From positions 124,001 through 188,000 of the IMG/VR virus record IMGVR_UViG_3300042402_002641: 64,000 bases of DNA; one strand, given 5' to 3'. A program made the position numbers and the translations under genes. Each line of letters begins with the position of its first letter. The first letter of the stretch is position 1. Positions 20,333 through 46,000 of this stretch are shown here, in pieces. The notes beneath the pieces are model-generated. The model searched no databases, was not told the DNA's origin, and saw only the letters and a list, made by a program, of their open reading frames with translations.

Positions 20333-20335
20333 AAT

Positions 20336-21265: not shown

Positions 21266-21302
21266 GTCATCCCTTATCGTGCCAAGTATTTATATGCTAG
21301 TA

Positions 21303-23652: not shown

Positions 23653-23656
23653 AATA

Positions 23657-25252: not shown

Positions 25253-25262
25253 TTGTGTGTCC

Positions 25263-27122: not shown

Positions 27123-27124
27123 TG

Positions 27125-29046: not shown

Positions 29047-29051
29047 GCTTG

Positions 29052-29097
29052 TATTTACTTTCATAAATTAACCATGCAATTTTAAATTATGTAAATA
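29052..29097. promoter_or_regulatory. Back-to-back divergent TAAATA promoters
   Basis: GTATTTAC (29051-29058) and GTAAATAC (29091-29098); each TAAATA lies exactly 5 nt from its ATG (29046 minus, 29103 plus). Confidence 0.75.
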
Positions 29098-29102
29098 CTC
29101 GT

Positions 29103-29657: not shown

Positions 29658-29660
29658 TAT

Positions 29661-30284
29661 ATGAAACGAATACTTAATTTATTTTCAGTTCCGATATTAG
29701 AAACAATTATAACAGATGTTGACAATCTCAACAAGGATTTGATAAGTTCAATTGACGCACTGTTTGCGTTAGATGATTCAAAAAGAATTTTGAGTCACAT
29801 GTGGAAAAATAATTTACAAACCAATGTAAAAAGCGAACTAGGCTACAGTTCATTCAATCAACATGACATCCTACAGCGTACAGAGTTTGACAGTTTATTT
29901 AATTTACTTACTCCTACAATAAATGGTTTTTTCACACAATTAAATTTTCCTGGCACTTGGCAGTGGGAAAATGCTTGGTGCAATGTTTATCCGCTTGATG
30001 CTTACGTGCCGTTACACGATCATAGAGGTGTTCATTGGAGCGGAGTATACTACGTGCAGGCTGAAACCGCGTGTGGAGATCTTTTATTGGTAGATCCTAA
30101 AGAATATGCATTGGCGAATGAACCTGATAATACCTTATATCGTGGTAATAAGATAACCAATTTTGTTCCGCAGCCTGGAAAATTGATTATGTTTCCCGGA
30201 TATTTAAAACATGAGTCAGAACCTAATCAATCCGATAAGGATCGAATTATAATTAGTTTCAATATAAATTGCCATGCAGACTAA
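29661..30284 (+). CDS. 2OG-Fe(II) oxygenase (TIGR02466-like)
   Basis: AWCN...LHDH...WSGVYYV...DP...PGKLIMFPGYLKHES...RIIISFN. Confidence 0.88.
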   Translation: MKRILNLFSVPILETIITDVDNLNKDLISSIDALFALDDSKRILSHMWKNNLQTNVKSELGYSSFNQHDILQRTEFDSLFNLLTPTINGFFTQLNFPGTWQWENAWCNVYPLDAYVPLHDHRGVHWSGVYYVQAETACGDLLLVDPKEYALANEPDNTLYRGNKITNFVPQPGKLIMFPGYLKHESEPNQSDKDRIIISFNINCHAD

Positions 30285-30858
30285 CGACATACACTTCTTT
30301 ACTGACAATCCGTATCTCCTTGTCACTAAAATAAATATCGTAGAAACACAAAGAAGACGGATGATCGATTGTGTACTATCTCAAAAAGATATAGCCAAGT
30401 ATCACGGAGGTTACACTTTTGAAATTATGGATCCGTATAATGACTTTGCAGAATTGTATAATATCTTCGTAGAATTAGCAAGACAGGTCTTTGAGAATTT
30501 TAGATTTAGTGTAAAACAAAAGAATTGGTGTTGGGCAAATGTATATAACTCCAGTAACAACAAGACTAATATGCATAACCATGTCAATACTTCAACTATC
30601 AATGGTGTGTTTTATCTGCATGTTCCAACTTTACCCGACGGCGAAGGTGGTCTTCAAATTACTAACAACGGTGTTGTTGATACATTTTATCCCGAAACTG
30701 GTGACTTATTGATTATGCCGTCGTGGATGCTGCATCAACCATGTGATCATAGTTCGGAAGAATATCGTATTTCAATTAACATGGAAATTAACACAATAGA
30801 ATCTGTAGATAATTTATATCTGTTAGATAAAATTCATAAAAACTGTACTCATGCATGA
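30274..30858 (+). CDS. 2OG-Fe(II) oxygenase
   Basis: WAN...MHNH...INGVFYL...GDLLIMPSWMLHQP...RISIN. Confidence 0.82.
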   Translation: MQTNDIHFFTDNPYLLVTKINIVETQRRRMIDCVLSQKDIAKYHGGYTFEIMDPYNDFAELYNIFVELARQVFENFRFSVKQKNWCWANVYNSSNNKTNMHNHVNTSTINGVFYLHVPTLPDGEGGLQITNNGVVDTFYPETGDLLIMPSWMLHQPCDHSSEEYRISINMEINTIESVDNLYLLDKIHKNCTHA

Positions 30859-31342
30859 TTCCTACAGTGTAATTTCAAAATCCTTTTTGACCTCGGATCA
30901 GTGTGACGAAATTATTGCTAACCATGATTGCAATTTAGAGCATGTAGAACAATCAATAAACCGCAAAGTTAATATTAAAGAAATTGATTTGTGTAGTGTT
31001 CCCAATCTAGTTGAGTTACTCAATGATGCCAACAATAAAATATTTCGCATGGACACCAATGGAGAAACTGAATGTTATTTTGCTCGGTATGATCCTGGCA
31101 ATCACTATGATAAATTGCACATTGATAGTCTGTCTGCAGAAATTACAAGAAAAATTTCCTTTAGTATCTTTCTAAATGATGATTTTGAAGGCGGTAATTT
31201 TGAAATGCTAGGTGAAAGTCTTGATATAAGAAAAGGAAAACTTTGTGTTTTCCCTTCCTTTTTACCTCACAGGGTAACCGCAGTTACTGCCGGCACCAGG
31301 TACGTTATTTTTGGATTCTTGTTAGGCCCCAGACTGAAATAA
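30851..31342 (+). CDS. 2OG-Fe(II) oxygenase (PKHD/P4H-like)
   Basis: LHID...RKISFSIFLNDDFEGGNFE...FPSFLPHRVTAVTAGTRY. Confidence 0.88.
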   Translation: MHDSYSVISKSFLTSDQCDEIIANHDCNLEHVEQSINRKVNIKEIDLCSVPNLVELLNDANNKIFRMDTNGETECYFARYDPGNHYDKLHIDSLSAEITRKISFSIFLNDDFEGGNFEMLGESLDIRKGKLCVFPSFLPHRVTAVTAGTRYVIFGFLLGPRLK

Positions 31343-31822
31343 CGGTGTAAAGAATGCTGTTCTAACTATCGCTTCCTCTCCCTCGAGTGTTTTAGTACTA
31401 CTACCACCAGGTCCTGTTGCTTTTAGACTCACATCAAGGGCTAGATCAGTTTGCCCTTTCTCGAGATTCAACACCACTTCTTCAGTAGTGTGTTTAACAC
31501 CATCAACAGTCCATTCGACACTCGTTACTGTTCCGGATATTCTCGATGTCAAAGTAATTTGATCGTGAGTTCTTGTTTGCTTGTGATCAATGTCTATATT
31601 TACAGAAGGTGGCCCTTCTGTTGGAATTGGATTCTCAGCCGCATGCTCTGTAGCCCATTGTCCTCCAGAGATCCATGTACCGTTTTTTAGTTTCCATCCT
31701 ACATGCACTCCTTCGTTGGGAATATCCATCCATTCAGCCAAAAGATCTGGATGGAACCTAGTTGCAGGATCATCATCACATATTTCAACTATTTCATTGT
31801 TTACAACTCTTGCCCATGTCAT
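31322..31822 (-). CDS. Hypothetical protein with possible C-terminal PKD/Ig-like domain
   Basis: SVEWTVDG...V.L.ATGPGGS.TKT is PKD-like; follows the Cys-rich pair. Confidence 0.6.
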   Translation of the reverse strand: MTWARVVNNEIVEICDDDPATRFHPDLLAEWMDIPNEGVHVGWKLKNGTWISGGQWATEHAAENPIPTEGPPSVNIDIDHKQTRTHDQITLTSRISGTVTSVEWTVDGVKHTTEEVVLNLEKGQTDLALDVSLKATGPGGSSTKTLEGEEAIVRTAFFTPLFQSGA

Positions 31823-31837
31823 AATATTTTCCTTTTA

Positions 31838-33496
31838 TTAAGCGTCTTTCCAGTATAAAATTGCCATCCCAGTCCCAGCTGGACTAGCTAGATAATCCAG
31901 TATGCATGGTGGAAATGCCAGTGCTGGGTTAGCTGTTGATCCGTTACAGCAGTCAAATGCTCCGCCATAGCAGATGCACAAAATATAGCTTCTATTTATT
32001 CCCGATCCGCCACCTTTACCAGCTTTTGACGATAGATGGCAAACTCCAACACCGCCTGCACCCCCTAGTGTTCCTGCACAGCTGATAATGAATGGAAATA
32101 ATGCATCCATCATTCTTTCTGCACAACAGACTTTGTTGGTGGTTCCTAGACAGCATACCAGTTCCCAATTTATGCTACCACATGCATTTGTTGCAGAACC
32201 CGCTACGCAACACTGCATGCCATAACTGCATAAATCGCAACAGTTAAACACAACACCACCAGTGCCTGCACCTTCGCCTGCGATTCTAGATGGTTTGTGG
32301 TTGTATGGATTAGCTGTAGCCCATCCACAAGAACCCCAATCATTGTTACCTACGTTAATATTTCTTCCTGCTGATCCACTACCAGCCATGTCGTGTATGT
32401 CGTGCCATGGATAGAATTTAGGGCTTAGTCCGGGTTCAGTAATACATGATCTAGGATGAATTGTTGATCCCCAAGGACTGTGATGTTGATAACCCCATAT
32501 CCAATAATCTTCTCGTCCTTCATTGTTCATCTTGCCGCCCCATCCTCCGGGGCCAGAACGATAACGTCCTGATTCGCAGCAGCCTTCGTAGTTCTGGCAG
32601 GTGCAGTATTCAATACACTGCCATTTAGAGCCGCCGCCGCCGCCGGCGTGTGCAGGATAAGATGATCTTGGAACCACAGATCCCGCATAATTACAGTTAC
32701 CCTTTACACATATACAGGCACAGATTGGATCTCTCACAGCGCAGCGGTTTATGTATCCGATTCCGCCACCACCTCCTGCTGAAGGTCCGTATCCTTGTCC
32801 GTAATTGTCCATGTTGTTGAAAGCGCATTGGCCAGCACCTCCAGTGGACCAAATCCATGATCCTGCACTGCCGCCGCCAGCATATCTAGCAACACAACAA
32901 ACACCAGAATCGTGTGCTGGGTCAAGCTGTCTTGCGCTAATTCCGCTCCATACCACACAATATCCGCAACAATTCTGTGCATAGGTGTAGATGCAGGCTC
33001 CGCAATAATGGCTGGCTCCGCCACCACAGTAATTTCTATTGTAACCGCCAGCACCGCCAGTGCTGTTCCAATCTCCGCCACTGGCACTACCGCCTGTACA
33101 GGCCGCTGCGCCGCCTCCTGTTACTAGAATGCCGCCTGGGGTATATGTTACTGCAGTATTTCCTTCTTGTCTTCCGACTGTGATTTGAACTGAATTGCCC
33201 GGAACCACGGTAAAATATTTTTCGGCATACCCACCTCCGCCACCTGCGGTGCCGCAACATTGAGGATTACAGGGTTTTGTTTTGCCGCCACCACCGACTG
33301 CGATGGCTCTCATACAGGTAACACCAGTCGGCACTGTAAATGTGTATGAGCCAGGTGTGTCAATTACTACTTTATTCTGCCAACATTCGTTGGCATCATA
33401 ACTGTATCTGTGAGTGCTTACATTATAACAAGTAGTCGCTACATTTGCTATGCAAGTACTTGGTTGTGATGCACCGGTGCTTATATAACGTCCCAT
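31838..33496 (-). CDS. Gly/Cys-rich putative fibre-tip adhesin, paralog A
   Basis: 552 aa, about 46 Cys by manual count, many GGxG motifs; DTPGSYTFTVP and AI.YW ends typical of glycine-rich tail domains. Confidence 0.7.
   Translation of the reverse strand: MGRYISTGASQPSTCIANVATTCYNVSTHRYSYDANECWQNKVVIDTPGSYTFTVPTGVTCMRAIAVGGGGKTKPCNPQCCGTAGGGGGYAEKYFTVVPGNSVQITVGRQEGNTAVTYTPGGILVTGGGAAACTGGSASGGDWNSTGGAGGYNRNYCGGGASHYCGACIYTYAQNCCGYCVVWSGISARQLDPAHDSGVCCVARYAGGGSAGSWIWSTGGAGQCAFNNMDNYGQGYGPSAGGGGGIGYINRCAVRDPICACICVKGNCNYAGSVVPRSSYPAHAGGGGGSKWQCIEYCTCQNYEGCCESGRYRSGPGGWGGKMNNEGREDYWIWGYQHHSPWGSTIHPRSCITEPGLSPKFYPWHDIHDMAGSGSAGRNINVGNNDWGSCGWATANPYNHKPSRIAGEGAGTGGVVFNCCDLCSYGMQCCVAGSATNACGSINWELVCCLGTTNKVCCAERMMDALFPFIISCAGTLGGAGGVGVCHLSSKAGKGGGSGINRSYILCICYGGAFDCCNGSTANPALAFPPCILDYLASPAGTGMAILYWKDA
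31895..31983. repeat. 89-bp perfect direct repeat, copy 1
   Basis: Base-by-base identical to 33556-33644. Confidence 0.97.
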
Positions 33497-33498
33497 GC

Positions 33499-35091
33499 TT
33501 AATAGTCCCTGTAATAAATTATTGCATAGCCTGAACCAGCATTACTGACCAAATTATCCAGTATGCATGGTGGAAATGCCAGTGCTGGGTTAGCTGTTGA
33601 TCCGTTACAGCAGTCAAATGCTCCGCCATAGCAGATGCACAAAAACTGACATTTAGCTTCGCCGCCACCACCACCGTAGCCTGCTTTTGAAGTCATGGAA
33701 CAAATTCCTACTCCTCCTGATCCGCCCAGTATTCCTGCGCATGTTATAAAGTTAGGAAACAAAGAATCTACCATTTTATAGGCCTGATCGGTCTGACCGC
33801 AAAGGCCAAGTTGACATATTTTCAGCCAATTTATTAGAGGGCCACCTGAATTATTGTTGGCTCCCATGCCCCATCCTTGCTGTTGTGCATCACAACAATA
33901 GTGCATGATGCCTCCAGTGCCCGACCCTTCTCCTGCATTCGCTGGACGAATACCCCATGATGTACCCATACAACTAAAACGCTGATGCCATTCAGCCACG
34001 TGGCCGGGTGATCCAGACCCTTTGATCTCTTGTATATCCCACCATGGTTCTCTAACTGGATCGCTGTATCCGCAGCGCACCTTCCATTGTGAGCAACAAC
34101 GAACTCCAAATGGCCAAGCGCAGTAGGCGCTCCAGCCCCATTCAAAGGTCCATCCTTCACTTTCATTTTGATCTGAACCGCCTGGACCTCCTGCGCCTCC
34201 AAGCCAAATACCGTTGATACATTGTCCTTGCCATGAACGGCAGCAGGCCGAAGGATTTATCTGTGTTCCGCCGCCGCCTTGGGCAGAACCTGGATGTGGC
34301 AAGCGAGGATGATCATGATCACTGTGCCCGTTGTTGTTGAATATGCAATTGCAGGTGCAACAATTGTAATGCCAATAAGTCGGCGCTTGGCCGCCGATAC
34401 CAGCGCCACCCGCAGCCACTCCAGAATGCAGATATCCGCAGACACAGCTGGCCGAACCACCACAAATATTCACTGGGCTTCCTGCACTGCCGCCACCGTT
34501 AACTATGGTATTACAGCAATCTGTGCCACCGTTTGAACTGTTCAAACATGTATAAACAACACAATATCCGCAACAGCTGGCAAAACAAAGATACTTGCAG
34601 CTGCCACACCAGTGGCTGACTGAGCCGGCGCATTGATTACAACCCCAGCCTCCGTATCCTCCCCTACTGTTCCAATCGCCTCCACTTCCGACTCCAGGAA
34701 TACACCCACTTGCTCCAGTAGCCGAATGAACTGCAACTGCGTTACAGGTTATGCTAGATGTTCCTTCTTGTCTACCAACGGTTATACCTATTGTAGCGCC
34801 AGGTGTCACGGTGAAGTATTTTTCACTTAGACCTCCGCCTGATCCTGCTGCAGAACAACAGGCGCCTATTGATATACATTTAGGTTTTCCGCCGCCGCCG
34901 ATCACTATTGTTCGAGCACAAACTATGCCTGAAGGAACGGTAAAGGTATATGTTCCTGGACGATCGTAGACCACCTTGTATGGCCAACACTGTTTTCCGT
35001 CATAGTATCCTTTTCCCCCTGTGACCTTAAAGGCAGAGGTTTTTTCTAAAACAGGATTTTCTGTTACTACTATTGGTACAAAACGTCCCAT
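33499..35091 (-). CDS. Gly/Cys-rich putative fibre-tip adhesin, paralog B
   Basis: 530 aa, about 45 Cys, collinear with paralog A. Confidence 0.7.
   Translation of the reverse strand: MGRFVPIVVTENPVLEKTSAFKVTGGKGYYDGKQCWPYKVVYDRPGTYTFTVPSGIVCARTIVIGGGGKPKCISIGACCSAAGSGGGLSEKYFTVTPGATIGITVGRQEGTSSITCNAVAVHSATGASGCIPGVGSGGDWNSRGGYGGWGCNQCAGSVSHWCGSCKYLCFASCCGYCVVYTCLNSSNGGTDCCNTIVNGGGSAGSPVNICGGSASCVCGYLHSGVAAGGAGIGGQAPTYWHYNCCTCNCIFNNNGHSDHDHPRLPHPGSAQGGGGTQINPSACCRSWQGQCINGIWLGGAGGPGGSDQNESEGWTFEWGWSAYCAWPFGVRCCSQWKVRCGYSDPVREPWWDIQEIKGSGSPGHVAEWHQRFSCMGTSWGIRPANAGEGSGTGGIMHYCCDAQQQGWGMGANNNSGGPLINWLKICQLGLCGQTDQAYKMVDSLFPNFITCAGILGGSGGVGICSMTSKAGYGGGGGEAKCQFLCICYGGAFDCCNGSTANPALAFPPCILDNLVSNAGSGYAIIYYRDY
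33556..33644. repeat. 89-bp perfect direct repeat, copy 2
   Basis: Identical to 31895-31983; encodes (L)CICYGGAFDCCNGSTANPALAFPPCILD. Confidence 0.97.
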
Positions 35092-35103
35092 ATTATTATC
35101 CTA

Positions 35104-35427
35104 TCATGCTGTAGATGTTTCAATGCCATATGCTATGGCATTAACTGATGTTGCGCTGGAATAAACTACTAACAATTTGCCCGCTTGCATCACTATTCCT
35201 GTTCTTTCAAGCACAGAATTTGCTCCTAAAGAAACTCCGTATTCTAAATATTCTGCGTTTGTAGGCGTCGAAGCAGACGCCACTGCAAGTCTCACTGTTA
35301 CTGCCGTTGCACCTCGATTTACAATAGAGACTGTGACTACTGCGAATGTTGTTGCAGGAACAGTATAGATTGTAGTATTAGTAGTTGCGGCTAAGTCCGA
35401 GGGTGTTCCTAAGATACCTGTTGCCAT
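35104..35427 (-). CDS. Small beta-rich virion protein
   Basis: 107 aa, AGGAG SD; similar pattern to 48878-49210 and 52098-52499. Confidence 0.7.
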   Translation of the reverse strand: MATGILGTPSDLAATTNTTIYTVPATTFAVVTVSIVNRGATAVTVRLAVASASTPTNAEYLEYGVSLGANSVLERTGIVMQAGKLLVVYSSATSVNAIAYGIETSTA

Positions 35428-35448: not shown

Positions 35449-38400
35449 TTAGTTCAAAAAGTAATTGAATGCCAAAGGAAGGCCAGTTACGCCGCCTCTA
35501 AACTCAAAAGTCGCTAACATTTGGATAGCAGCACCTGTAGTCGTTGTAATCTGATTGCTATTAATTACAATAGAACCAGCAGTTACTTGGTTTACGTTTA
35601 GACTTGCGCCTCCGCCACCAATTTGACTGGCAATAAATGCTTTTATCGCTTTCTGTGTGGGCACTACATTGTCTGAATCAGCAGTAAAAAACGGATCGGT
35701 AGAGAATTCGTTAATTGTAGCTGAAGATCCGCCTAATGTAACATTTCCTAGATTAAGTTCCTGAAGTCCGGAAATATTAAATGCATCTGCATTCAATGTT
35801 GCAATACCTGTGCTCTGCTCAATGTTGAACAGGTCTCCTACTCGGAAATTGCCGTCTTGGTCAGTTGATGTAAAGAATACTCGTCCTCCATTACCGTCTA
35901 CAGTTTCGTTAGCGGGTATTGCTTCCTGTAATGGCGTGCCAGGATAGTTTGTTTCTACAAAATTTCCTGTGCCTATACTTAAAAAATCGTGTCCTGTAAG
36001 TCTGACCTGACTATAACGTAGTCTAGTGGACACTGTTACTGCATCTTGCGGTGCCTCTGATATTGTCAACACTGGGCTAATTTGCAGAAATGCTGTATGA
36101 GATCCTGGGTTTTGTCCTAAAAATGTGATCACATTTACCAATTTGAATGTTCTGTCTGGCAGATGCCCAAACACAACATTGGCGCCTGGAGTGGGTCTTG
36201 CTGTAAGCTGTCTTACTGCTACAAAACCGCCAGATTGAAATAAATTTGAATATCCATCTCCTGCAGTGACTTCTGCACCGCTGGTGACATATGTAGCACC
36301 TCTATCTACAAAACTTGGATTTGCTAGCACTCCTGATCCTAGTCTTACAGATACTGGTGCTTCAAAGGTGTTGTTAGGATCAGTAAATGTTATAGACGGT
36401 TCGGTGGTATAACCAGATCCAGGCTCTGTGATATTGATCTGGAATATCTTGTTTGATGCTACCAACGCACGAGCTCTAGCAGTGGCTCCGGTTCTAATGT
36501 ATGTGGCCACTTGACCTGTGCTAGCGCCAACACCTACAAATTGACCATAACGATCTCTGTTACCAAAAGTGATAGCTGAGAATCCGCTGGCCGCTGCACT
36601 GGTCGTTCTTGTGGTCCATGTTACGCCGTCTGGAGAAGTTGCTGCTGCTGTGGTTGTACTTACAGCAAGGAATACTCCTTGACCGTATGTGACCTTGGTC
36701 CATTGTGCTGTTGCTGGCAGTGTGCTGGCAGTCCAAGTAATACCATCTAGACTGTAAGCAGCTATAGTGCCGCTGGTGTTGGAAACAGCAACAAACCTAT
36801 TATTACCGTAGGCTATGCTGTTCCAGTTTGAGCTAGAAGGCAATGTGCTTGCAGTCCAGGTTCCTGTAACACCTGTTGTGGTCGCATAGTTTGTGACATT
36901 GGTTCCGCTTTTAATGGCTACAAATCTGTTTTTACCGTATGCAATAGCTGTGAAACCAGTGGTGGTCAGTGTACCTGTTTGATCCCAATTTTCGCCATCG
37001 TTGCTGATTCTCACTGTAGTGACATCGCTGCTGATTGCTACAAATTTCTGTGAGTTAAACCCTCCAAATACCACATCGACCCATGTAGCAGAAGTTCCCA
37101 TATTAGCTGCTGTCCATGTGATACCATCTTCGCTGTATGCGGCTGTGGTGTTAGCGGCAACACCAGCTACTGCTACAAATTTGCTGACTTTGCCTACTGT
37201 GGACCCATCGTCGAATAGGCCAGCGGTCATCGCTGACCAGTCAGCAGCACTAGGCATCAGACTAGGTCTTGTAGTCCAGCTAACTCCATCTTCGGAGGTC
37301 GCGCCCACTGTAGATCCTTGACGCAGAGCCACATATCTGCCGCCGATACCGTAACCGCTGTGATCAAAATCTATAATAGCACCAGTCGCAGCATTGACCG
37401 CTGTGATGGTTATCACTAGGTCGTTGGCTGTGCTTAATCCGCCTAAACTAGTACCTAGTATGGTTATGGTCTGTAATCTCACATAACCTGTGCCAGCTGT
37501 CTGTAAAGAAGGTGTGTATTTCCATCCGTTGCGTATCACGGTAAAGTTTGCCCCAACACCGGCACCGCTGTAGGTGCCTGTTAATGATGTGTATACCGCA
37601 GCAGTTTCACCGTATTTCACTGCACTCCAGGTGCCTGAAGTTGGTAGTGTAGCTGCTGTGGATGTATAACCAGGTGCTGAGAATGTTACTCTAGGTTCAA
37701 TGATATAGGTGGTCGAAGCATCTGGAGCTACAATGGCTGTGCCTGCAACAAGATGATCAAAACCTGTTGTACCATCAGATTCTTTTATTAATCCTGCTAT
37801 CTTGGTACCTGAATTGTATGTGTTGATGATACCAAACTGTCCAACACCTGCACCACCGGTTAACACTAGTTTCATGCCTATATAAGCAGTGCTAGATTCC
37901 CCGTCTGTGGCAGCAATAGTCACTGAATTTGATGTTCCGCCCTGCGCAGTATTGGAATTAGTAATATATCCGAATCCGCCAAAATTGCCCACAGATTCTG
38001 GAGCATTCGTGCTATCGTCAACAAGATCTAACAAACGAGCTTCAAACACAGCATCATCACGGAATTCATCTGCTTGTACAGAACCTCCTGTACCGCCACC
38101 TGTTATCACATAAGATACTTCGGTGTAGTCAATACCAGCATTTAGAAATTCAAACTGAGTCAATGCAGATCCGTCAGTAACAATGTTATCGATCACAGCC
38201 TTAAATTTAAGACGATTATCAACTACTCCGGTATCTGGAGTTTCTGTAGGGTCAACTCCTTCTGCTACAGCCCCAAAATCTCCGTATGAGCAGTTGCCGT
38301 TGGTTCCACGAATTCTACCACCGTTTTCCGCTAGGTAGCCCACGTGAGCATAATATGTAAACACAGAAACTAGCTCAGCACGGCCGTTGTTAGTGATCCA

Positions 38401-41400
38401 AGCACCGATACCGTCGCTTAGAACCTGCGTAAAGTCGTTGGAAACTATAGAATCGTTGCCTCCGTTATGCAATGCGCCGTCGATCTTTTGGCCAACGCAA
38501 GCTGTACCTAATGTGGTTACGCCTTGTACGTATGGTGAACGGGTGTTAATCCAGGTGCGATAATCCTCTGGACCCCAACCTGGATCCAGTGATGCATACG
38601 CACCTGCAGAAACTCTTGAAGTTCCGAATTCATTAGGTGCAAGTAGATCACCTGTGAGTCCTTGCAGAGTTTGATCTCTTAGACCTGTGCCGTCTCTGAG
38701 ATAATACATGTCTTCTTCTAGACTTCCTGTTACACTGTTAGCATAGTACCTAGCAGCGTATCTTGATTTGTAATTGCCTGGATATTTCAAATCATACTTT
38801 AGTGCATCAATATAGGTGCCAACATCTCGTAGGCACGATGCACTATTGTAATACAATGCTACTGTCATAGATCCTGAGGCATCGGATGCGATGTCTAGTG
38901 CTGTGTTTGAATCTCTTGTTGTAGCGATTTTAAAGGTTGTTGAGCTTACAACGTTCTGTATGTAATATGTTGTACCTGCACTAATACCGCCAAACGTTGT
39001 TCCTGTAAATCTCACTGCTGCATTACGCTGCATCCAAGCAGTGCTGGTGCAGGTAAACACGTCTGTGGCCGCGGTGGCATTTGTTACTGTAGTTGTATAC
39101 GTTGAGTCTATGTAGGCATCGATCTCTGCAACTATGTAGTCTCTGTTTCTTTCTAATTGCAGAACTGCGTAATCGACCATCCTGTTGCCAGAGGCACAAC
39201 GACTACCTTCATTAGTAGCGCCATAAATGATATCATCTAACAGAGTCATTAGGGTTTCAATGCGAGCCTGTGCAGTGGTATCTCCGCCTACATTGGCCTT
39301 GGCTAGACCTTTGACGTAAGTGAATGCTGCTCTAGTGGCTGCTTTCTGTCCTAGACTATACACGTCTGATGAGCTGGCTCTTAGATAGGCCAATGCAGCG
39401 TTTCTAGTTTGTCCGTTGGCGTTAAACATAAAATCGTAGCCCACTGCATCTAATATGATCTTAGCATCGCGTTCACATTTTGCAGAATTGTAGACTAATG
39501 TGGGGAAGTTAGCAGCAATATACGCAGTCATCGCTGATACAATAGTACTGACCTGTGCATTTAATGTGGTAAACGCAGTGATCAATGCGGTGGTAGAACT
39601 TACACCGTTGGTGGCAATCGGACGATCCTCATAGGTCATTACCAAGGTTAAACCGGAACCGTTAGTAAATCCTGTTGCCGCTGAACCTGCATATGATGTT
39701 GACACTTTGAAATCTGTACCAGTTAACCCTGAAGCGATCACATAATAGCGTGTGCCTGCAGTTAGACCATTCTGTGTTTCAATAGGAACCACTAGATCTC
39801 CTGCTTGTAGGCTGTGACCAGCGGTGACAAAAGTATCTGTACCAGTGATTGAAGTCACTGTGACTATAGGAGGAGTAGCTGCTGTAGAGTCACCTGCCAA
39901 CAGATTAGTGATATTGTCAATGTTAGCGCCGATGAATGAGCTGGCTGCGGAACCTCCTGTGAGATTAGTTGCGTCAGTGAATTGTGTAGCAGCATTACCT
40001 GCGGATTTGGTCACTGTGGTGTTGGCAGCGATCTGCTGCATCACAGTTTTTAATCTGCCATAAGATGCCACAGTAGCGGCAACTTCTGATGCATCTATTT
40101 CTAATCCTGTAGTGCCATCAAAATAGGCTAATCCTGCATTGAGGGTCTGTGTAAAACCACCATAGGTCAAGTCATAGATCATTGCATCAACTATAAAGCC
40201 TGTGTCTCGTTTGCATATGGTTCTAGAATATTGCACTGAAGGATAGTTTGCCGTGATATAAGCAATAATTTCAGCCTTGATAAATTCTTTGTTTTCTTTT
40301 ATTAGTGTTCTAGCGGCACCGTAGCCTGTGAGATAAGCACCGTTGTATCCTGTAGGGTCTGTATTTGATACCATGTGTGTGGTACTGATACGATAATCGA
40401 TCTGATGCTGTATTACTCTTACCAGTTGTGTAATATCTGCCTGTTCATCTGCGCTGGCATACGGAAATGCTACACTCTGTGTAGCGGTGTTTCCTGAACT
40501 TTCCGTCACGTTCTGGCCAAAAATAATTTGGCTGACCACTGTTTCCATTCTTGACAGCGCACCAACAGAATAGTATGAATCTGCCAGATTGGTCAAGCTG
40601 CCTGCAGGACCAGCATTTGTTGATCGAAGTTCAGCTCCTATAACACAGGTCTGCTCCGGAACAATGATCGGCAGTGTTTCTCTATACTGGCCAGTAGCTA
40701 TGCGGATAAGATTGTTAGGGCTTACGCGAGCTGGAACACTGGCTAATGCTGCTGCAATCTGTGGGGCAGTAACCGCTGCTGCGCGAGCAGTGATAGCATT
40801 AGTTATCACTTCAACTAATTCAGCCGCTGTGGTGTAAGATCCTGATTCAGCATGGAGGTCGGCATTGAAATACTGCGCTACGGTAGCTGTTGAATTGTCA
40901 CCGTTTAGAGTTTGATAGTTTACTGCTGGTGCTGACTGTGCCAGAACATTCTCAACTAAAGTGACCATATAGTTATAGGCAGCTATAGATTCGTCTGATT
41001 CTGCAGCAAGTCCTGGATAAGCTTCGGTTTCTTCTGCGCTGAGTCCGCCTATGAGAGCATTGGCTGCACCTCTAGTTTTAACGTTACCACCATGTCTCAA
41101 ATCATAGATCAGTGCATCAACAACAAATCCTACATCTCTTTCACATTTGAAATCATCGTAGACGAACGCTGATGTAAACGGTGCGATGTTGTTGGTGATT
41201 TGATTTTGTATGAACTCAGTGGTTTCACGCTGTATAAACACGCGATTTAGTTCTAGTAGATATGTGGCATCGGGATTTCTTGGACCTCGTTCTACCTGTT
41301 CGCAGGCATATCGAATAGTCTTCCAAGGCTTGTCCCATGTTTTTCCGTATGTTGGTCCAGGAAGGTCGGTTCCGTCTGTACTAACAAAATATTCATGATC

Positions 41401-42984
41401 GATTTGATTAAGAGAAGCCCACTCGGGTATCGTCCCAGTAGATCTTAATATTTGTCCTTCATAGCCGATAGGCAGTCTTGTAGGACCACTAGGACTGTAG
41501 TATACTAAATCACCTACTGTGGTTAAAACAGAAACTTCCGATCCAACACTTAATAAACTCCAATAGATTCCTGTAGTATCTTGGTCAGGTCTAGAATTTG
41601 GCTGACCGCCGCCGGCTGATCCTACTGTAGATCCGTCATCACCTTCTGACCTATGTGCCAGCAAACAGATATATGTGTTAGATTCAAATCTAACAGCATC
41701 ACCTTGTAGATAATCTACATCATCAGTCCAGGTGCCTTGCCAGCTAATACCAGAATTCAATCTAGTCCAGTATGAGGCATTTGGTGGTTCTGCTGAAACT
41801 GTAGCGGTCATTGAACCAGTAGCATCGCCTGTGATATCAAATGTTGAGCCACCAGATGTAGTTGAAATTGTTATGTTACCTGCGGCCACAGTCTTAACAA
41901 AATATCTAGCAGTGGTAAACACGTTGCCAAATGTTGTGCCGGTGAATCTCACTGTCATACCTACTGCGATACCTGTTGTAGAAGCTATAGTGAAGGTGTC
42001 TGTGCTAGCGGTGACTGCTGTAACTGTGACTACTGTAGATGGTGAGTTAGCTGTGGCAAGATAGGTATATCCTCCTAGTCTGACCACTTCACCGATCTTG
42101 TATGATGTTGCGTTCGTCCAGTCTGATTGAAATTTCAGTCCTTCAGTGAACAGATCCCAATTAGAAGCGGTAATTGCAGGGTTAGCCGCGGCAGATGCGG
42201 CAGTGTGTACAGTTTTAGCTATGTATTGATTACCACCGTAGCCAACTATATCTCCTGGTTGATACAGTGTAGCTGAACTCCATGTGCTTTCATATGCTAC
42301 ACCTTCGACAAATTGTGCCCAGCGACCTGCAGTACTGTCTGTTAAGAATGCACCGGCCGCGGTATGTTGTATGATACAGATCCAAAGTCCTGCACCTTCT
42401 TTTACGACGTCATTGATTTTGTATCTGGTTCCAGCAACCCAAGTAGTTTTGTATTCTACTCCTTGGTTAAAACTATCCCATTTAGCTTGATCTGCCTCCA
42501 GTCCCGATGCAGTTGTGGATGCAGATGTATGATGAGTATTACACACATAGGTGTAGCCACCATATCTAACTAGATCATTTACCTTGTAACGAGTAGATAC
42601 GTTCCAGTCGGTTTTCCAATCAAATCCTTCTGCATACACAGTCCATTTAGCTTGATCAGCTTCAAGGCCCGATGCAGTAGTAGCAGCGGATGTGTGACTG
42701 TCGTTACAGATATATAACAATCCGCCATATTTGACCACATCGTTGAGTTTGTAGAATGTACCAACAGTCCAATCTCCGGTCCATGCCTGACCGTCGCTCA
42801 TTTGGTTCCATTTGGTAGGACTATATTCAAGGTCTGTGTTGAAATCTGCAGCAGAGGTATGTCCTACCGCGCAGATATAGGTGCGCCCACCATATCTTAT
42901 TACATCATCTATGTAATAAACTGTGGCGGCACTCCAGTTGCCTTTCCATACAAATCTAATTCTACCTAGTTTAAATTCTGCCAT
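35449..42984 (-). CDS. Giant tail-fibre/virion protein, 2511 aa
   Basis: 7 N-terminal CBM5/12-like repeats, CxRD helical repeats, beta-helix-like region, W..IAYG..RFVA propeller-like repeats, conserved RLTGHDFL/STDQDGNFR C-terminus. Confidence 0.85.
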   Translation of the reverse strand: MAEFKLGRIRFVWKGNWSAATVYYIDDVIRYGGRTYICAVGHTSAADFNTDLEYSPTKWNQMSDGQAWTGDWTVGTFYKLNDVVKYGGLLYICNDSHTSAATTASGLEADQAKWTVYAEGFDWKTDWNVSTRYKVNDLVRYGGYTYVCNTHHTSASTTASGLEADQAKWDSFNQGVEYKTTWVAGTRYKINDVVKEGAGLWICIIQHTAAGAFLTDSTAGRWAQFVEGVAYESTWSSATLYQPGDIVGYGGNQYIAKTVHTAASAAANPAITASNWDLFTEGLKFQSDWTNATSYKIGEVVRLGGYTYLATANSPSTVVTVTAVTASTDTFTIASTTGIAVGMTVRFTGTTFGNVFTTARYFVKTVAAGNITISTTSGGSTFDITGDATGSMTATVSAEPPNASYWTRLNSGISWQGTWTDDVDYLQGDAVRFESNTYICLLAHRSEGDDGSTVGSAGGGQPNSRPDQDTTGIYWSLLSVGSEVSVLTTVGDLVYYSPSGPTRLPIGYEGQILRSTGTIPEWASLNQIDHEYFVSTDGTDLPGPTYGKTWDKPWKTIRYACEQVERGPRNPDATYLLELNRVFIQRETTEFIQNQITNNIAPFTSAFVYDDFKCERDVGFVVDALIYDLRHGGNVKTRGAANALIGGLSAEETEAYPGLAAESDESIAAYNYMVTLVENVLAQSAPAVNYQTLNGDNSTATVAQYFNADLHAESGSYTTAAELVEVITNAITARAAAVTAPQIAAALASVPARVSPNNLIRIATGQYRETLPIIVPEQTCVIGAELRSTNAGPAGSLTNLADSYYSVGALSRMETVVSQIIFGQNVTESSGNTATQSVAFPYASADEQADITQLVRVIQHQIDYRISTTHMVSNTDPTGYNGAYLTGYGAARTLIKENKEFIKAEIIAYITANYPSVQYSRTICKRDTGFIVDAMIYDLTYGGFTQTLNAGLAYFDGTTGLEIDASEVAATVASYGRLKTVMQQIAANTTVTKSAGNAATQFTDATNLTGGSAASSFIGANIDNITNLLAGDSTAATPPIVTVTSITGTDTFVTAGHSLQAGDLVVPIETQNGLTAGTRYYVIASGLTGTDFKVSTSYAGSAATGFTNGSGLTLVMTYEDRPIATNGVSSTTALITAFTTLNAQVSTIVSAMTAYIAANFPTLVYNSAKCERDAKIILDAVGYDFMFNANGQTRNAALAYLRASSSDVYSLGQKAATRAAFTYVKGLAKANVGGDTTAQARIETLMTLLDDIIYGATNEGSRCASGNRMVDYAVLQLERNRDYIVAEIDAYIDSTYTTTVTNATAATDVFTCTSTAWMQRNAAVRFTGTTFGGISAGTTYYIQNVVSSTTFKIATTRDSNTALDIASDASGSMTVALYYNSASCLRDVGTYIDALKYDLKYPGNYKSRYAARYYANSVTGSLEEDMYYLRDGTGLRDQTLQGLTGDLLAPNEFGTSRVSAGAYASLDPGWGPEDYRTWINTRSPYVQGVTTLGTACVGQKIDGALHNGGNDSIVSNDFTQVLSDGIGAWITNNGRAELVSVFTYYAHVGYLAENGGRIRGTNGNCSYGDFGAVAEGVDPTETPDTGVVDNRLKFKAVIDNIVTDGSALTQFEFLNAGIDYTEVSYVITGGGTGGSVQADEFRDDAVFEARLLDLVDDSTNAPESVGNFGGFGYITNSNTAQGGTSNSVTIAATDGESSTAYIGMKLVLTGGAGVGQFGIINTYNSGTKIAGLIKESDGTTGFDHLVAGTAIVAPDASTTYIIEPRVTFSAPGYTSTAATLPTSGTWSAVKYGETAAVYTSLTGTYSGAGVGANFTVIRNGWKYTPSLQTAGTGYVRLQTITILGTSLGGLSTANDLVITITAVNAATGAIIDFDHSGYGIGGRYVALRQGSTVGATSEDGVSWTTRPSLMPSAADWSAMTAGLFDDGSTVGKVSKFVAVAGVAANTTAAYSEDGITWTAANMGTSATWVDVVFGGFNSQKFVAISSDVTTVRISNDGENWDQTGTLTTTGFTAIAYGKNRFVAIKSGTNVTNYATTTGVTGTWTASTLPSSSNWNSIAYGNNRFVAVSNTSGTIAAYSLDGITWTASTLPATAQWTKVTYGQGVFLAVSTTTAAATSPDGVTWTTRTTSAAASGFSAITFGNRDRYGQFVGVGASTGQVATYIRTGATARARALVASNKIFQINITEPGSGYTTEPSITFTDPNNTFEAPVSVRLGSGVLANPSFVDRGATYVTSGAEVTAGDGYSNLFQSGGFVAVRQLTARPTPGANVVFGHLPDRTFKLVNVITFLGQNPGSHTAFLQISPVLTISEAPQDAVTVSTRLRYSQVRLTGHDFLSIGTGNFVETNYPGTPLQEAIPANETVDGNGGRVFFTSTDQDGNFRVGDLFNIEQSTGIATLNADAFNISGLQELNLGNVTLGGSSATINEFSTDPFFTADSDNVVPTQKAIKAFIASQIGGGGASLNVNQVTAGSIVINSNQITTTTGAAIQMLATFEFRGGVTGLPLAFNYFLN

Positions 42985-43002: not shown

Positions 43003-46000
43003 TTATCTGAATGATCTATGAAACATCGATTGTGCTAACATTGTTCCTCTAATTCCTACTGTGGGTCCAACAAAGTCTGTACGTACTGGGAATATATTGC
43101 TTTGATTCGCAGTGGTGTCGATAAGATTTGGACCTACTAGTATAGTTCCTGCTATAAAACTTGTAACAGCTATTTCGCTACCGCCAACAGATAGTCTATA
43201 GGCCAGATAGGATTTGATTGCTTTCTGGGTCGGTACTACGTTATTTGAATCTTCTGTAAACAATGGATCAGTAGAAAATTCACGTACGACTGCTCCAGAT
43301 CCGCCTACACGTATTCCCCCAAGACGTAATTCACTTAATCCATTTAGATCAAAAAAGTCCGCAGAAATAGTAACAACACCTGTGGCCTGTTCTACAGCGA
43401 ATAATTCGCCTGCACGGAAGTTACCGCTTTGATCGGTAGATGTATAAAATACTCTACCACGATTTGCTTCCACTACTTCGTTTTCTGGTGCAGGAGTATA
43501 GAATCCACTGTATAATTCTGGGTAATTGGTTTCTTCGAAATTTCCTGTACCTATGTCTAAGAAATCGTGTCCAGTAACACGACACTGACTTATGTCTGTT
43601 CTAATAACTATTGATGTGTCGTGTTGTACAAAATCACGTGATTTAAATTCTGGACTGATTCTAATTTGTGCAGACAATCCTAAAGGTGTATCGTCAAGAG
43701 GTGTAATAGCAACCAACGTGTAAAAATCTGGAAGATTACCTATTGTTAGACTAGATCCAGGGCCCGGATACTGTGTTAGGCCGTTCAAAACACAGAATTT
43801 TCCTACCGGTATTACATCGGCATAGCCGTCTCCGGTGATTGTCACAGTTGTGCTGGTAGTTCTATATCCCAGTCCTCTGTTAATCCAACTTGGTTGTGCT
43901 AGAACTCCGTCGCCGGTTCTACATTCTACAGCAGGATCAGAAGAATTATTGGGATCTATGATTGTTAGAGTTGGTGATTCAATATATCCAGAACCAGGAT
44001 CCCATATTTTTACAGTACGGATTATGCCGCTACTCAGTGTCAGACGCCCTAATGCTGTGGCACCGGTTTGTATTTTATTGATATAATTAGAGTTATCAAC
44101 AGTGATCCACATTGGTGTTTTCTTGCCTACCGTTGAATCTCGCGAATCAATGTACGGATTACCAAATGCCAAGTTCTGCCATAGTTTACTGTTGGCCAAT
44201 TGCCTTGAAGTCCAAACTACTCCGTCATAACTGGTAGCGGCAAAATTAGTCTCAAAGGCACTGGCATCGTTTCCTATGTTTCGGCCACCGGTGTCACCTA
44301 TGGCAAAAAATACTCCTTGTCCATATTTGATTTTTTTCCAATAGTGTGCGGTTGATCCATCTTGTGTGGGCATCGTAGCAGGTAACCAATCAACGCCATC
44401 AAAGCTGTATGCAACTTCGCCTGTACTTGATAATGCCACAAATCTATTATTACCGTAACTGATACTGGTCCAATCTTTAGCAGACGAATCACCAATCACA
44501 TCCATGATATGTCCAGCCCACGACCATGTATTTGCTATAGAATTATAGGTTCCTACTGCAACAGTATTGCCGCTGTTTGCTAATACAACAAACGTGTTTT
44601 TACCATACGCAATATCGATCCATTCGTTGAGGGTGGAGTCGCCAAATGTAGGCAGTGCCACTGTGGTCCAACTTGTGCCGTTCAAACTATAAGCGGCAGA
44701 GTTAGAATTTGTGGCTATAGCAAGAAATACACCGCCACCGTAGATGGCACTATTCCAAGATCTAGATGCCGGCATGGATCTAGTGGTCCATGTAAATCCA
44801 TCCGGGGAGCTGGCTGCCACCGCACTGCCTGTGCGTATGGCCACAAATATATGATTACCCAATGCGGGATATGTAACTCTGCCTGCTGCAAGACATTGCC
44901 AATTTCCCGAGCTCGGCATGTTAAACCCAACCCAAGTTGTTCCGTCGTCACTATACATAGCGACATTGGTGCCGGAAGCCACAGCTATGAATTTGCCGCC
45001 TGCTCCAAAACTTTCATTTCCTGTATTTACAATCTGTTCTGCTACTGATAACACAGAGTTTGTGCTGTCATCGCTTACGTCAAGTACTTTCATTACTATG
45101 TCGTTGCCTGGAGTATCGCCACCGAGTAAATTTCCAGGAATAGTTAATAGTTGATTAACAGCATATCCTGCTCCTCCGTCATTCAGCGTGATGGTGTAGG
45201 TTCTACCATTTTTCACCACATTGAATGAGGCGTAGGCCGGAGTAACTTCAATCACAGTACCAGTTCCTGCTGTGGTGGTAGCTATATCTGTAAACGATTC
45301 AGTTGTTTCACCATAAATTATGTTGGTCCAAGATGCACTCTCTGGGCCAATAATCTGCGTGGCCGAATAAGGCGGTGCTGAAAACACCGGTCTTGGTTCT
45401 ATTCTATATACCGTATTAGTTAATAAGGGTACTGTTGCCGGTTTTCCTGATACCACATGATCCCAACCGATTGTGCCATCTGATTCTTTATAAATCGTAG
45501 CGATCTTAGTAATATTATCGTAGGCTCCTATATATCCGTATTGACCCGTTCCAGCACCGCTGGTTATGATAATTCTCATACCATTATACTGTGTAAATGT
45601 GTTTTGATCGTTTGAAGCCAATGTGATAGTGGTGGCATCTCCTCCTTGCGCATTGTTTCCTGTGGTAACAAAACCTCCCCCGCCTATTGATTGCGGTCCA
45701 GTGGTATTTTTATCTATAATTCTAGCTTCAAAAACAGCATCGTCTCTGAAATCTTCAAATATCACACTTGCATTAACACCGGCACCCTGAACACTGCCTT
45801 GTGCAGTGGTATAGTTTTCACCACAGTGAGAAAATTCAATATTCTGTATTTCGTCTACGAAATCTCCGGCAAATGCTGCAGCGACCGTTGCTTGTCCGCT
45901 GCGATTATCTATCACAGCAGTTCGCGGTATTTCGTCGACATTAACACCATCTGAAATCACGCCATACGATCCGTATGAACTGTTTCCGTTAGTGGCACGT

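What the first reader, a model, noticed from the sequence alone, without database searches (positions are those of the whole stretch)
31838..35091. Tandem pair of Gly-rich proteins with ~45 cysteines each
Seen: two collinear paralogs (552 and 530 aa) with ~8% Cys, many CC and CxC pairs, GGxG motifs alternating with divergent Trp/His/Asn-rich segments, directly downstream of the giant fibres. Established: T-even gp38 adhesins alternate glycine-rich motifs with hypervariable loops, but are not this Cys-rich; cytoplasm-assembled phage proteins are usually Cys-poor. Inference: polyglycine-II sandwich adhesins whose loops are locked by many disulfides or metal ions, possibly substrates of the neighbouring halogenase and oxygenases.
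Basis: partly seen in the sequence, partly recalled or inferred. Interest (0 to 1): 0.75.

Follow-up and report, generated by a model that had tools for sequence, protein, structure and literature searches.

The report
Cysteine-packed glycine-rich tail-fibre adhesin pair
Two neighbouring genes of an uncultured lake-water jumbo phage most likely encode paired host-recognition proteins with a known glycine-rich tail-fibre fold, unusual because each carries about 46 strongly conserved cysteines whose chemistry is untested.

Summary
ORFs 31838-33496(-) and 33499-35091(-) encode 552 and 530 aa with 46 and 45 Cys (8.3% and 8.5%; genome median 1.0%) and about 19% Gly. They are collinear paralogs (41% identity).

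An AlphaFold2 model (pLDDT 80.5) matches the TNF-like plus glycine-rich ("TG", Pfam PF21722) receptor-binding domain: cyanophage Pam3 fibre gp24 (Z 11.0), the Bxb1 tail tip (Z 9.4-9.9) and ALK/LTK (Z about 7-9). Unrelated folds score 5.8 or less. S16 gp38 itself was not matched.

Sixteen conserved Gly motifs alternate with seven hypervariable, Cys-enriched segments. About 100 metagenomic homologs keep 39-56 Cys. After Gly, Cys is the most conserved residue type.

Every related locus that spans the region reads: fibre, fibre, 107-aa gene, B-type, A-type, 166-aa gene. A distant Cys-rich relative sits in a siphovirus-like tail module with the same small flanking genes.

Best reading: free-standing tip adhesins whose enlarged loops are cross-linked by disulfides after release into oxic water. 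The disulfide step is inferred, not shown. A link to the halogenase and oxygenases is not supported.

This is a new variant of a known kind.

The parts
33499..35091 (-). B-type Cys/Gly-rich TG-domain protein (530 aa, 45 Cys), upstream member of the tandem pair
   Evidence: ORF; composition. It belongs to the B-type clade (38 of 100 sequences, support 1.0). An ortholog sits in the same position in every spanning locus.
31838..33496 (-). A-type Cys/Gly-rich TG-domain protein (552 aa, 46 Cys), downstream member of the pair
   Evidence: ORF. AF2 model pLDDT 80.5, pTM 0.84. Structure matches: Pam3 gp24 Z 11.0, Bxb1 tail tip Z 9.4-9.9, ALK/LTK Z about 7-9. It has 106 homologs.
35104..35427 (-). 107-aa Cys-free protein between the fibre and the adhesin pair; candidate adapter or structural partner
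   Evidence: phrog_11338 'tail fiber protein', E 1.8e-10. More than 1450 homologs; the 120 best listed are 64-95% identical. Present in all related loci and, at 35% identity, upstream of the distant Cys-rich relative in L007.
31322..31822 (-). 166-aa companion protein: conserved N-terminal domain (1-63) plus PKD/Ig-like domain (70-157); candidate chaperone or accessory
   Evidence: Always directly downstream of the A-type gene. Its divergence tracks that of A and B. AF2 pLDDT 88.7. PKD domain match Z 9.8. A weak N-domain match follows the L007 relative.
35449..42984 (-). Giant tail fibre, 2511 aa
   Evidence: phrog_9851 tail fiber, E 5e-171. No Cys after residue 1565.
43003..48489 (-). Giant tail fibre, 1828 aa, paralog of the 2511-aa fibre
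   Evidence: phrog_9851, E 8e-154. Shares repeats D1 and D3-D5 with the other fibre. Last Cys at residue 1636.
31895..31983 (-). 89-nt tract in A (aa 505-534) exactly identical to 33556-33644 in B: a recent gene-conversion tract
33556..33644 (-). The matching 89-nt tract in B (aa 483-512)

Best explanation
A and B are an anciently duplicated pair of free-standing receptor-binding (adhesin) subunits of the tail-fibre apparatus of a freshwater jumbo myovirus.

Architecture (from the predicted model and the alignment):
- Each protein is one enlarged TNF-like plus glycine-rich (TG, Pfam PF21722-type) domain.
- A beta-sandwich base is built from the N-terminal strands and closed by the last strand (residues 544-549).
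- From this base emerge hairpin loops. Their stems are 16 conserved Gly motifs, presumably packed as a polyglycine-II-like lattice as in Pam3 gp24.
- The loop tips are expanded into 12-34-residue hypervariable segments rich in Cys, aromatic residues and Asn. These tips would contact the host surface.

Inferred steps:
- The proteins fold in the reducing cytoplasm on the Gly lattice.
- After lysis into oxic lake water, most of the roughly 46 thiols oxidise to intramolecular, mainly inter-loop, disulfides. These would rigidify loops that lack a hydrophobic core.
- The conserved 107-aa and 166-aa neighbours act as adapter and chaperone or accessory.
- The two paralogs serve the two paralogous giant fibres or two receptors.
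For: Fold:
- AF2 model of A: pLDDT 80.5, pTM 0.84.
- A Foldseek-independent PDB search gives Pam3 fibre gp24 Z 11.0 (171 residues aligned across model residues 17-552), Bxb1 tail tip Z 9.4 and ALK Z 8.7. The next hits score 5.8 or less.
- 155 BFVD viral hits and ESM Atlas clusters are PF21722 tail-fibre proteins.

Sequence link to PF21722:
- 18 of 47 family members hit PF21722.
- The family profile reaches PF21722-bearing proteins.

Published function of the fold:
- The Pam3 gp24 TG domain is proposed as the receptor-binding tip. That virion uses disulfides, and DTT releases its fibres (PMC9608196, PMC9942802).

Genomic context:
- The genes share a strand and have 2-21-nt gaps at the end of the structural module that runs portal, capsid, fibres.
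- Every related IMG/VR locus that spans the region keeps the order fibre, fibre, 107 aa, B-type, A-type, 166 aa.
- A distant Cys-rich TG protein (614 aa, 64 Cys) occupies the receptor-binding-protein slot of a siphovirus-like tail module, flanked by homologs of the same small genes.

Evolution:
- Hypervariable tips lie between conserved Gly stems.
- A, B and the 166-aa gene diverge faster than the fibre C-terminus or the enzymes.

Cysteines:
- 39-56 Cys in 100 homologs, with 13 columns at least 95% conserved.
- Cys retention is 74% at 50-65% pairwise identity, against 39-61% for all other residue types compared except Gly.
- At 93% identity, 46 of 46 (A) and 44 of 45 (B) Cys are kept.
- Other PF21722-like proteins have a median of 0.7% Cys.
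- The motif spectrum is CC 9, CxC 4, CxxC 3. From general knowledge, this resembles disulfide-rich extracellular proteins more than Zn sites.
- The habitat is oxic lake water.
Against: - There is no virion or expression proof. Lake metatranscriptome contigs cover the genes, but DNA carry-over cannot be excluded.
- The redox state was not tested. The tool gave no model coordinates, so Cys-Cys distances and polyglycine-II geometry could not be measured.
- The Cys count is even in only 49 of 100 homologs. Only the N-terminal segment (A residues 1-67) shows an even-number bias, so not all Cys can be paired within the chain.
- Few variable Cys columns change together on independent branches.
- No thiol oxidase, DsbA or thioredoxin was found in the 280-kb record, which is about 79% complete.
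- Complex prediction of A with the 107-aa and 166-aa proteins gave no answer.
- The 166-aa protein shows only a generic PKD/Ig-like fold, not a known tail-fibre chaperone fold.
- A and B themselves do not reach any Pfam threshold.
Confidence: 0.6

Rival explanations
1. The fold and adhesin role are as above, but the cysteines bind metal ions (Zn, Fe, Cu or Fe-S clusters) that organise the loops, rather than forming disulfides.
For: - The Cys count has random parity (49 of 100 even).
- Invariant clustered motifs exist, such as CxCxC (C259/261/263), CCxxC (C176/177/180) and CxC (C507/509).
- The variable segments are enriched in His.
- From general knowledge, metal ions are known in other fibre tips (T4 gp37 Fe, gp12 Zn).
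- A metal site can assemble in the reducing cytoplasm, and no phage thiol oxidase was found.
Against: - CxxC, the classical Zn motif, is rare (3-4 per protein), while CC pairs dominate.
- Two thirds of Cys positions move between homologs (80 variable columns). That is unusual for metal sites.
- Known fibre metal sites use His, not Cys.
- No metal-site model was run.
Confidence: 0.15
2. The cysteines serve as small, packable side chains in and around the Gly lattice and stay reduced. No redox or metal chemistry is involved.
For: - The lattice needs small residues.
- Some Cys columns alternate with Ser, Thr or Ala.
- The proteins must fold in a reducing cytoplasm.
Against: - In variable Cys columns the replacements are enriched for Tyr, Gln, Asn, Arg and Pro, and depleted for Gly (0.64x). 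These look like loop or surface positions rather than lattice positions.
- Cys is densest in the hypervariable tips (11.1% against 8.0%).
- Related PF21722-like domains build the same fold with a median of 0.7% Cys.
- About 46 free thiols are unlikely to persist in oxic water (inference).
Confidence: 0.12
3. A and B are substrates of the neighbouring enzyme island (2OG oxygenases, Trp halogenase, luciferase-like monooxygenase, GT9-like protein plus carbamoyltransferase), giving a post-translationally modified adhesin. This could coexist with the best explanation.
For: - An enzyme island follows the adhesin cassette in every related locus that reaches far enough downstream.
- The GT9-like plus carbamoyltransferase pair also lies 0.65 kb downstream of the distant Cys-rich relative in an unrelated tail module (L007).
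- Iyer et al. 2010 proposed peptide-modifying roles for phage dioxygenase arrays (PMC2938197).
Against: - The evidence is adjacency only.
- The oxygenases next to the pair are on the opposite strand. The island has a different GC content (33-37% against 42-48%) and varies in gene content and order.
- The halogenase occurs only in the three closest relatives.
- L007 has no oxygenase or halogenase on record.
- Similar dioxygenase arrays occur in cyanophages such as Syn9 and were described there without reference to such adhesins.
Confidence: 0.08
4. A and B are not virion adhesins but assembly factors for the giant fibres (T4 gp38-type chaperones), or non-structural proteins.
For: - There is a weak hit to phrog_863 'tail fiber assembly' (E 2.7e-4).
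- There is no virion evidence.
- The N-terminus lacks the helical docking domain of Pam3 gp24.
Against: - The solved TG domains in phages are exposed fibre or tail-tip parts.
- Hypervariable tips and a conserved duplicated pair fit receptor binding.
- PF21722 domains usually sit at the distal end of fibre proteins.
Confidence: 0.05

Closest known systems
Cyanophage Pam3 tail fibre gp24 (PDB 7YPX / 7YFW): TNF-like plus glycine-rich receptor-binding domain
   Same: - Best structural match: Z 11.0, 26% identity over 171 aligned residues spanning the whole chain.
- A TNF-like sandwich bears Gly-rich hairpin loops with conserved stems and variable tips.
- A small companion gene lies directly downstream.
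- The Pam3 virion uses disulfides (PMC9942802).
   Different: - gp24 has about 280 aa and an N-terminal helical trimerisation and docking domain. A and B lack this domain (residues 1-25 are modelled as disordered).
- The gp24 loop tips are a few residues long, whereas here they reach 12-34 residues in a 530-552 aa domain.
- The reported Pam3 disulfides link fibre Cys28 to the baseplate wedge, not the Gly-rich domain.
- Here the fibre C-termini and the 107-aa protein have no Cys to link to.
- The companion protein has a PKD/Ig-like fold and was not matched to gp25 or Tfa.
Pfam PF21722 Gly_rich_2 'glycine-rich domain' of phage and prophage tail fibres, also found in giant-virus collagen-like proteins
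   Same: - The family profile reaches PF21722 proteins, and 18 of 47 members hit the model.
- 84 of the 100 nearest ESM Atlas clusters by language-model features carry PF21722.
- The context is tail-fibre genes.
   Different: - PF21722 domains have about 225 aa, usually sit at the C-terminus of a fibre, and have a median of 0.7% Cys.
- A and B are free-standing, 2.4 times larger and 8.3-8.5% Cys. Neither reaches Pfam significance itself.
Salmonella phage S16 / T2-type gp38 adhesin (PDB 6F45), a polyglycine-II sandwich
   Same: - Works alike in outline: a separate adhesin gene downstream of the distal fibre gene.
- Conserved Gly-rich motifs alternate with hypervariable segments.
- The Pam3 authors report local similarity between the gp24 and gp38 Gly-rich domains.
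   Different: - There is no detectable sequence match, and gp38 is not in the top 50 of any structure search.
- The base is a TNF-like sandwich, not the gp38 attachment and beta-helix domains.
ALK / LTK extracellular TG (TNF-like plus glycine-rich) domain, Pfam PF12810
   Same: Fold-level match, Z 6.8-8.8 over about 115 residues, with N- and C-terminal strands closing the sandwich.
   Different: It is a eukaryotic cytokine receptor module. There is no sequence relationship by Pfam, and its biology is unrelated.

Membership tests
TG / PF21722 (Gly_rich_2) tail-fibre receptor-binding domain | Sequence match to the PF21722 profile | tested here: inconclusive
   A and B have no Pfam hit at E<0.1. 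18 of 47 family members match (best E 2.4e-6). The family profile hits PF21722-bearing proteins such as P0120 and P0135. The homology is therefore transitive, and it covers only A residues about 40-170.
TG / PF21722 (Gly_rich_2) tail-fibre receptor-binding domain | TNF-like beta-sandwich base closed by N- and C-terminal strands, with Gly-rich loops inserted between strands | tested here: met
   On the predicted model (pLDDT 80.5): Pam3 gp24 Z 11.0, Bxb1 Z 9.4-9.9, ALK/LTK Z 6.8-8.8, with aligned ranges spanning residues 17-552. Unrelated hits score 5.8 or less.
TG / PF21722 (Gly_rich_2) tail-fibre receptor-binding domain | Glycine-rich motifs packed as a polyglycine-II-like lattice | not testable with these tools
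   16 conserved Gly motifs are present, and 339 of 552 residues are neither helix nor strand in a confident model. No coordinates were returned, so backbone angles and lattice packing could not be measured.
TG / PF21722 (Gly_rich_2) tail-fibre receptor-binding domain | Encoded in or at the distal end of a tail-fibre module | tested here: met
   A distant relative sits in a siphovirus-like tail module.
T-even gp38 adhesin (S16/T2 type) | Sequence or fold match to gp38 (PDB 6F45) | tested here: not met
   No match in 50,697 phage records. gp38 is absent from the top 50 of the Foldseek, VIA re-alignment and wide VIA searches. There is only a weak hit to phrog_863 'tail fiber assembly'.
T-even gp38 adhesin (S16/T2 type) | Conserved Gly-rich motifs alternating with hypervariable segments, with the gene downstream of the distal fibre gene | tested here: met
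   This shows a similar way of working, not membership.
Disulfide-rich extracellular protein | Cys paired in disulfides (even counts, spatially adjacent SG atoms, Cys columns changing in pairs) | tested here: inconclusive
   The Cys count is even in 49 of 100 homologs. Only the N-terminal segment of 17 tested shows an even-number bias. Few Cys columns change together on independent branches. Cys is nonetheless the second most conserved residue type. Distances could not be measured.
Diversity-generating retroelement target | A reverse transcriptase and a template repeat near the variable region | tested here: not met
   No RVT_1 match in the genome. The only repeat of A or B is the 89-nt identical A/B tract.

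The most novel reading that the evidence does not exclude
The roughly 46 cysteines make these adhesins redox-programmed. They would fold reduced in the cell and become active or locked only after oxidation in lake water. Alternatively, they could engage the host envelope by thiol-disulfide exchange or through a bound metal. Another option is modification by the co-travelling GT9-like and carbamoyltransferase pair. Any of these would be a chemistry-dependent receptor-binding mechanism not described for phage fibres. It may have arisen independently in several Cys-rich TG lineages (P0121, the L009 pair).
Probability: 0.15. Interest if true: 0.8.

Novelty: new variant of a known kind. Interest (0 to 1): 0.55.

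Why it matters
- Receptor-binding proteins decide phage host range. The TG fold is a recently solved and still little-studied type of such protein.
- This family shows the fold enlarged 2.4-fold. It carries a cysteine load (7-10%) that is rare for proteins assembled in the bacterial cytoplasm. That load is kept across about 100 lake-water homologs and in at least two other lineages.
- If the cysteines form a disulfide web or bind metal, this would be a clear case of virion maturation or stabilisation by extracellular chemistry. It would also offer a rigid, loop-diverse scaffold.
- The conserved B-then-A pair and its small flanking genes form a portable host-recognition cassette shared between a jumbo myovirus and a siphovirus-like phage.

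Tried and rejected
- **Cultured-phage relatives.** tblastn and megablast against 50,697 phage records found nothing.
- **Sequence search of the PDB.** Searches with the family profile and with the N-terminal part gave only chance hits.
- **Diversity-generating retroelement.** Rejected: there is no reverse transcriptase and no template repeat.
- **Phage-encoded thiol oxidase, DsbA or thioredoxin.** None found. The Erv1 search had no positive control.
- **Cyanophage assignment.** No psbA match. The capsid is closest to PA5oct, Phosso and Vibrio 2.275.O jumbo phages. The habitat is lake water, not sea water.
- **In-frame stops or selenocysteine in the L003 B-type copy.** Rejected: the ORF is intact (566 aa) and the public gene calls are simply fragmented.
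- **Disulfide docking to the fibre tip or the 107-aa protein, as in Pam3.** Unlikely: the fibre C-terminal parts and the 107-aa protein contain no Cys.
- **Complex prediction of A with the 107-aa and 166-aa proteins.** No answer (score 0.00). This is not evidence either way.
- **Chaperone fold for the 166-aa protein.** Only a generic PKD/Ig-like match was found.
- **Pairwise Cys co-variation.** Raw correlations mostly reflect the A-type/B-type clade split. After correction on the tree, only about 7 column pairs share 3 or more events.
Full report
**Observation**

The two ORFs are real. A is window 31838-33496(-), 552 aa. B is 33499-35091(-), 530 aa. A has 46 Cys (8.3%) and 102 Gly. B has 45 Cys (8.5%) and 101 Gly. 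CC pairs number 9 and 8, CxC 4 and 4, and GGxG 14 and 12.

The proteins align end to end at 41% identity (E 8e-98). The window lies in a 280-kb IMG/VR virus record, and these are the only two copies in it. Median Cys content of 273 ORFs in that genome is 1.0% and the 95th percentile is 3.3%. A and B are the only long ORFs above 6%.

Against a 93%-identical relative, dN/dS is 0.11-0.15. All 46 Cys of A and 44 of 45 in B are retained. These are therefore genuine, constrained coding genes.

**Genome and habitat**

The surrounding - strand carries portal, major capsid and two giant fibres of 1828 and 2511 aa. The two fibres are paralogs of each other. The capsid protein is 66-71% identical to those of jumbo phages PA5oct, Vibrio 2.275.O and Sinorhizobium Phosso.

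The DNA occurs in at least 16 lake-water metagenomes. Lake metatranscriptome contigs cover A, B and their neighbours at 90-99% identity. One 1142-nt contig bridges the A/B junction. DNA carry-over cannot be excluded.

**Family**

A word-seeded search of 5.8 billion proteins gave 106 homologs. Nearly all are 528-570 aa, all are unnamed, and all are metagenomic. An exhaustive profile search of 1.84 billion cluster representatives found only 16 at E<1e-30. About 170 further hits match only profile positions about 40-170. Some of those proteins carry Pfam PF21722 Gly_rich_2 across a whole domain of about 225 aa.

A and B themselves hit no Pfam model, but 18 of 47 family members hit PF21722. The family splits into an A-type clade (62 sequences) and a B-type clade (38 sequences, support 1.0).

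In every IMG/VR or other locus that spans the region, the order is fibre, fibre, 107-aa gene, B-type, A-type, 166-aa gene, then an enzyme island. The duplication is therefore old and both copies are kept.

**Fold**

AlphaFold2 on a 47-sequence alignment gave pLDDT 80.5 and pTM 0.84. Of 552 residues, 339 are neither helix nor strand.

Three structure searches agree:
- Foldseek puts the cyanophage Pam3 fibre first.
- VIA re-alignment of Foldseek's hits gives Pam3 gp24 Z 11.0, Bxb1 tail tip Z 9.9 and ALK/LTK TG domains Z 6.8-8.8.
- The Foldseek-independent wide search repeats this order, and the next hits score 5.8 or less.

The aligned ranges run from residue 17-41 to residue 549-552. The whole protein is thus one TNF-like plus glycine-rich domain whose sandwich is closed by the last strand. 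BFVD, AFDB and ESM Atlas neighbours are PF21722 'glycine-rich domain' proteins and tail fibres.

The Pam3 papers describe this domain as the receptor-binding tip. It has conserved Gly-rich stems in a four-layer lattice and variable distal tips (PMC9608196). Salmonella phage S16 gp38 did not appear in the top 50 of any search. The gp38 comparison therefore holds as an analogy, not as family membership.

**Anatomy**

Sixteen conserved Gly motifs alternate with seven hypervariable segments. Examples are GGGG at 68-71, 85-88 and 286-289, GGGGGIG at 241-247, GEGAGTGG at 407-414, GTLGGAGG at 475-482 and GKGGGSG at 493-499.

The hypervariable segments are enriched in Glu, Met, His, Gln, Asn, Arg, Trp, Phe, Asp and Cys, and depleted in Gly. 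Compared with a PF21722 domain of about 225 aa, the loop tips are greatly enlarged.

**Cysteines**

All 100 full-length homologs carry 39-56 Cys (mean 46.2). Thirteen columns are at least 95% Cys, 11 more are 70-95%, and 80 are variable. Fifteen columns are conserved in both clades.

Cys is the second most conserved residue type after Gly at every divergence level. At 50-65% pairwise identity, 74% of Cys are retained, against 39-61% for the other residue types compared. Cys is denser in the hypervariable tips (11.1%) than elsewhere (8.0%). In variable columns it is replaced mainly by Tyr, Gln, Asn, Arg and Pro rather than Gly.

Other PF21722-like proteins have a median of 0.7% Cys. A few independent lineages are also Cys-rich:
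- P0121: 614 aa, 64 Cys, with CCCC runs.
- A tandem pair of 254 and 259 aa in L009, with 25 and 27 Cys.

Evidence that would separate disulfides from metal sites is lacking:
- Cys counts are even in only 49 of 100 homologs.
- Only the N-terminal segment shows an even-number bias.
- Few Cys columns change together on independent branches.
- The tools gave no model coordinates.
- No thiol oxidase, DsbA or thioredoxin was found in the genome record.

The fibre C-terminal regions and the 107-aa protein contain no Cys. A Pam3-style disulfide anchor to them is therefore unlikely.

**Companions**

The 107-aa protein hits a PHROG tail-fibre family. It has more than 1450 homologs, and the 120 best listed are 64-95% identical.

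The 166-aa protein has a conserved N-terminal domain and a PKD/Ig-like domain. Its divergence tracks that of A and B.

In locus L007 the gene order is tape-measure gene, further tail genes, a 102-aa homolog of the 107-aa protein, the 614-aa Cys-rich TG protein, a 101-aa protein weakly like the 166-aa N-domain, then a GT9-like protein (47% identical) and a carbamoyltransferase (47% identical). The cassette is therefore portable between phage morphotypes. Complex prediction was uninformative.

**Enzyme island**

Window region about 18.6-31.3 kb has 33-37% GC. It encodes a carbamoyltransferase, a GT9-like protein, a DUF6071 protein, a luciferase-like monooxygenase, a Trp halogenase and at least seven 2OG oxygenases.

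Its content and order vary among relatives. The halogenase is present only in the three closest ones. L007 has no oxygenase or halogenase on record. The suggestion that A and B are substrates of these enzymes rests on adjacency alone.

**Conclusion**

A and B are best read as paired, free-standing TG-fold adhesins of the fibre apparatus. The step from 'many conserved Cys' to 'disulfide-locked loops' is an inference. It rests on the oxic habitat, the motif spectrum and the Pam3 precedent of virion disulfides (PMC9942802). Metal binding and reduced packing remain open.

I found no description of such Cys-rich TG adhesins in the searchable literature. I rate this a new variant of a known kind, of moderate interest.

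Noticed in passing
window 31895-31983 and 33556-33644: An 89-nt tract is exactly identical between A (aa 505-534) and B (aa 483-512), although the genes are otherwise about 50% identical at the DNA level. It is absent from the 93%-identical relatives L010 and L011 (longest shared run 13-22 nt). An independent 74-nt tract occurs at the same place in L022. This points to recurrent gene conversion in the conserved C-terminal segment.
   Followed up: yes
L007:7689-13216: A siphovirus-like tail module ends with a 102-aa homolog of the 107-aa protein. After it come a 614-aa TG protein with 64 Cys, a 101-aa protein weakly like the 166-aa N-domain, a GT9-like protein and a carbamoyltransferase (both 47% identical to window genes 20336-21265 and 18638-20332). 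The host-recognition cassette and this enzyme pair travel together across phage types.
   Followed up: partly
L009:177-1731; protein P0144: Small Cys-rich TG proteins also come as tandem pairs: 254 and 259 aa with 25 and 27 Cys, including CCC/CCCC runs. P0144 (264 aa, 20 Cys) is likewise followed by a 259-aa gene and preceded by a 105-aa gene. High Cys load and pairing recur in separate lineages.
   Followed up: partly
window 18638-31342: A low-GC (33-37%) enzyme island encodes a carbamoyltransferase, a GT9-like protein (phrog_8954), a DUF6071 protein, a luciferase-like monooxygenase, an FAD-dependent Trp halogenase and at least seven 2OG-Fe(II) oxygenases, plus several ORFs without any family. 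Gene content and order differ among relatives.
   Followed up: partly
window 35449-42984 and 43003-48489: The two giant fibres are paralogs. They share repeats and similar starts and upstream sequences (D5), and their last 120 residues are similar. Their N-terminal parts carry repeated motifs that public annotation scores weakly as CBM_5_12.
   Followed up: partly
L003:8301-9998: The public gene calls split an intact 566-aa B-type ORF into four short genes (42, 61, 110 and 131 aa). Fragments of this family in protein databases can therefore be gene-calling artefacts rather than pseudogenes.
   Followed up: yes
window 35104-35427: The 107-aa Cys-free protein has more than 1450 homologs, and the 120 best listed are 64-95% identical. 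It is far more abundant than the adhesins it precedes, so it probably also accompanies other fibre or adhesin types.
   Followed up: partly
window 31322-31822: Some relatives of the 166-aa protein have about 250 aa, with an insertion of about 85 residues in the Ig-like half. The 3' end of this gene overlaps the convergent oxygenase gene (30851-31342) by 21 nt.
   Followed up: no
window 10054-10389 (+): A 111-aa ORF has 9% Cys. Three other ORFs of about 100 aa elsewhere in the genome have 8-10% Cys. They were not examined and may be zinc-binding proteins or spurious ORFs.
   Followed up: no
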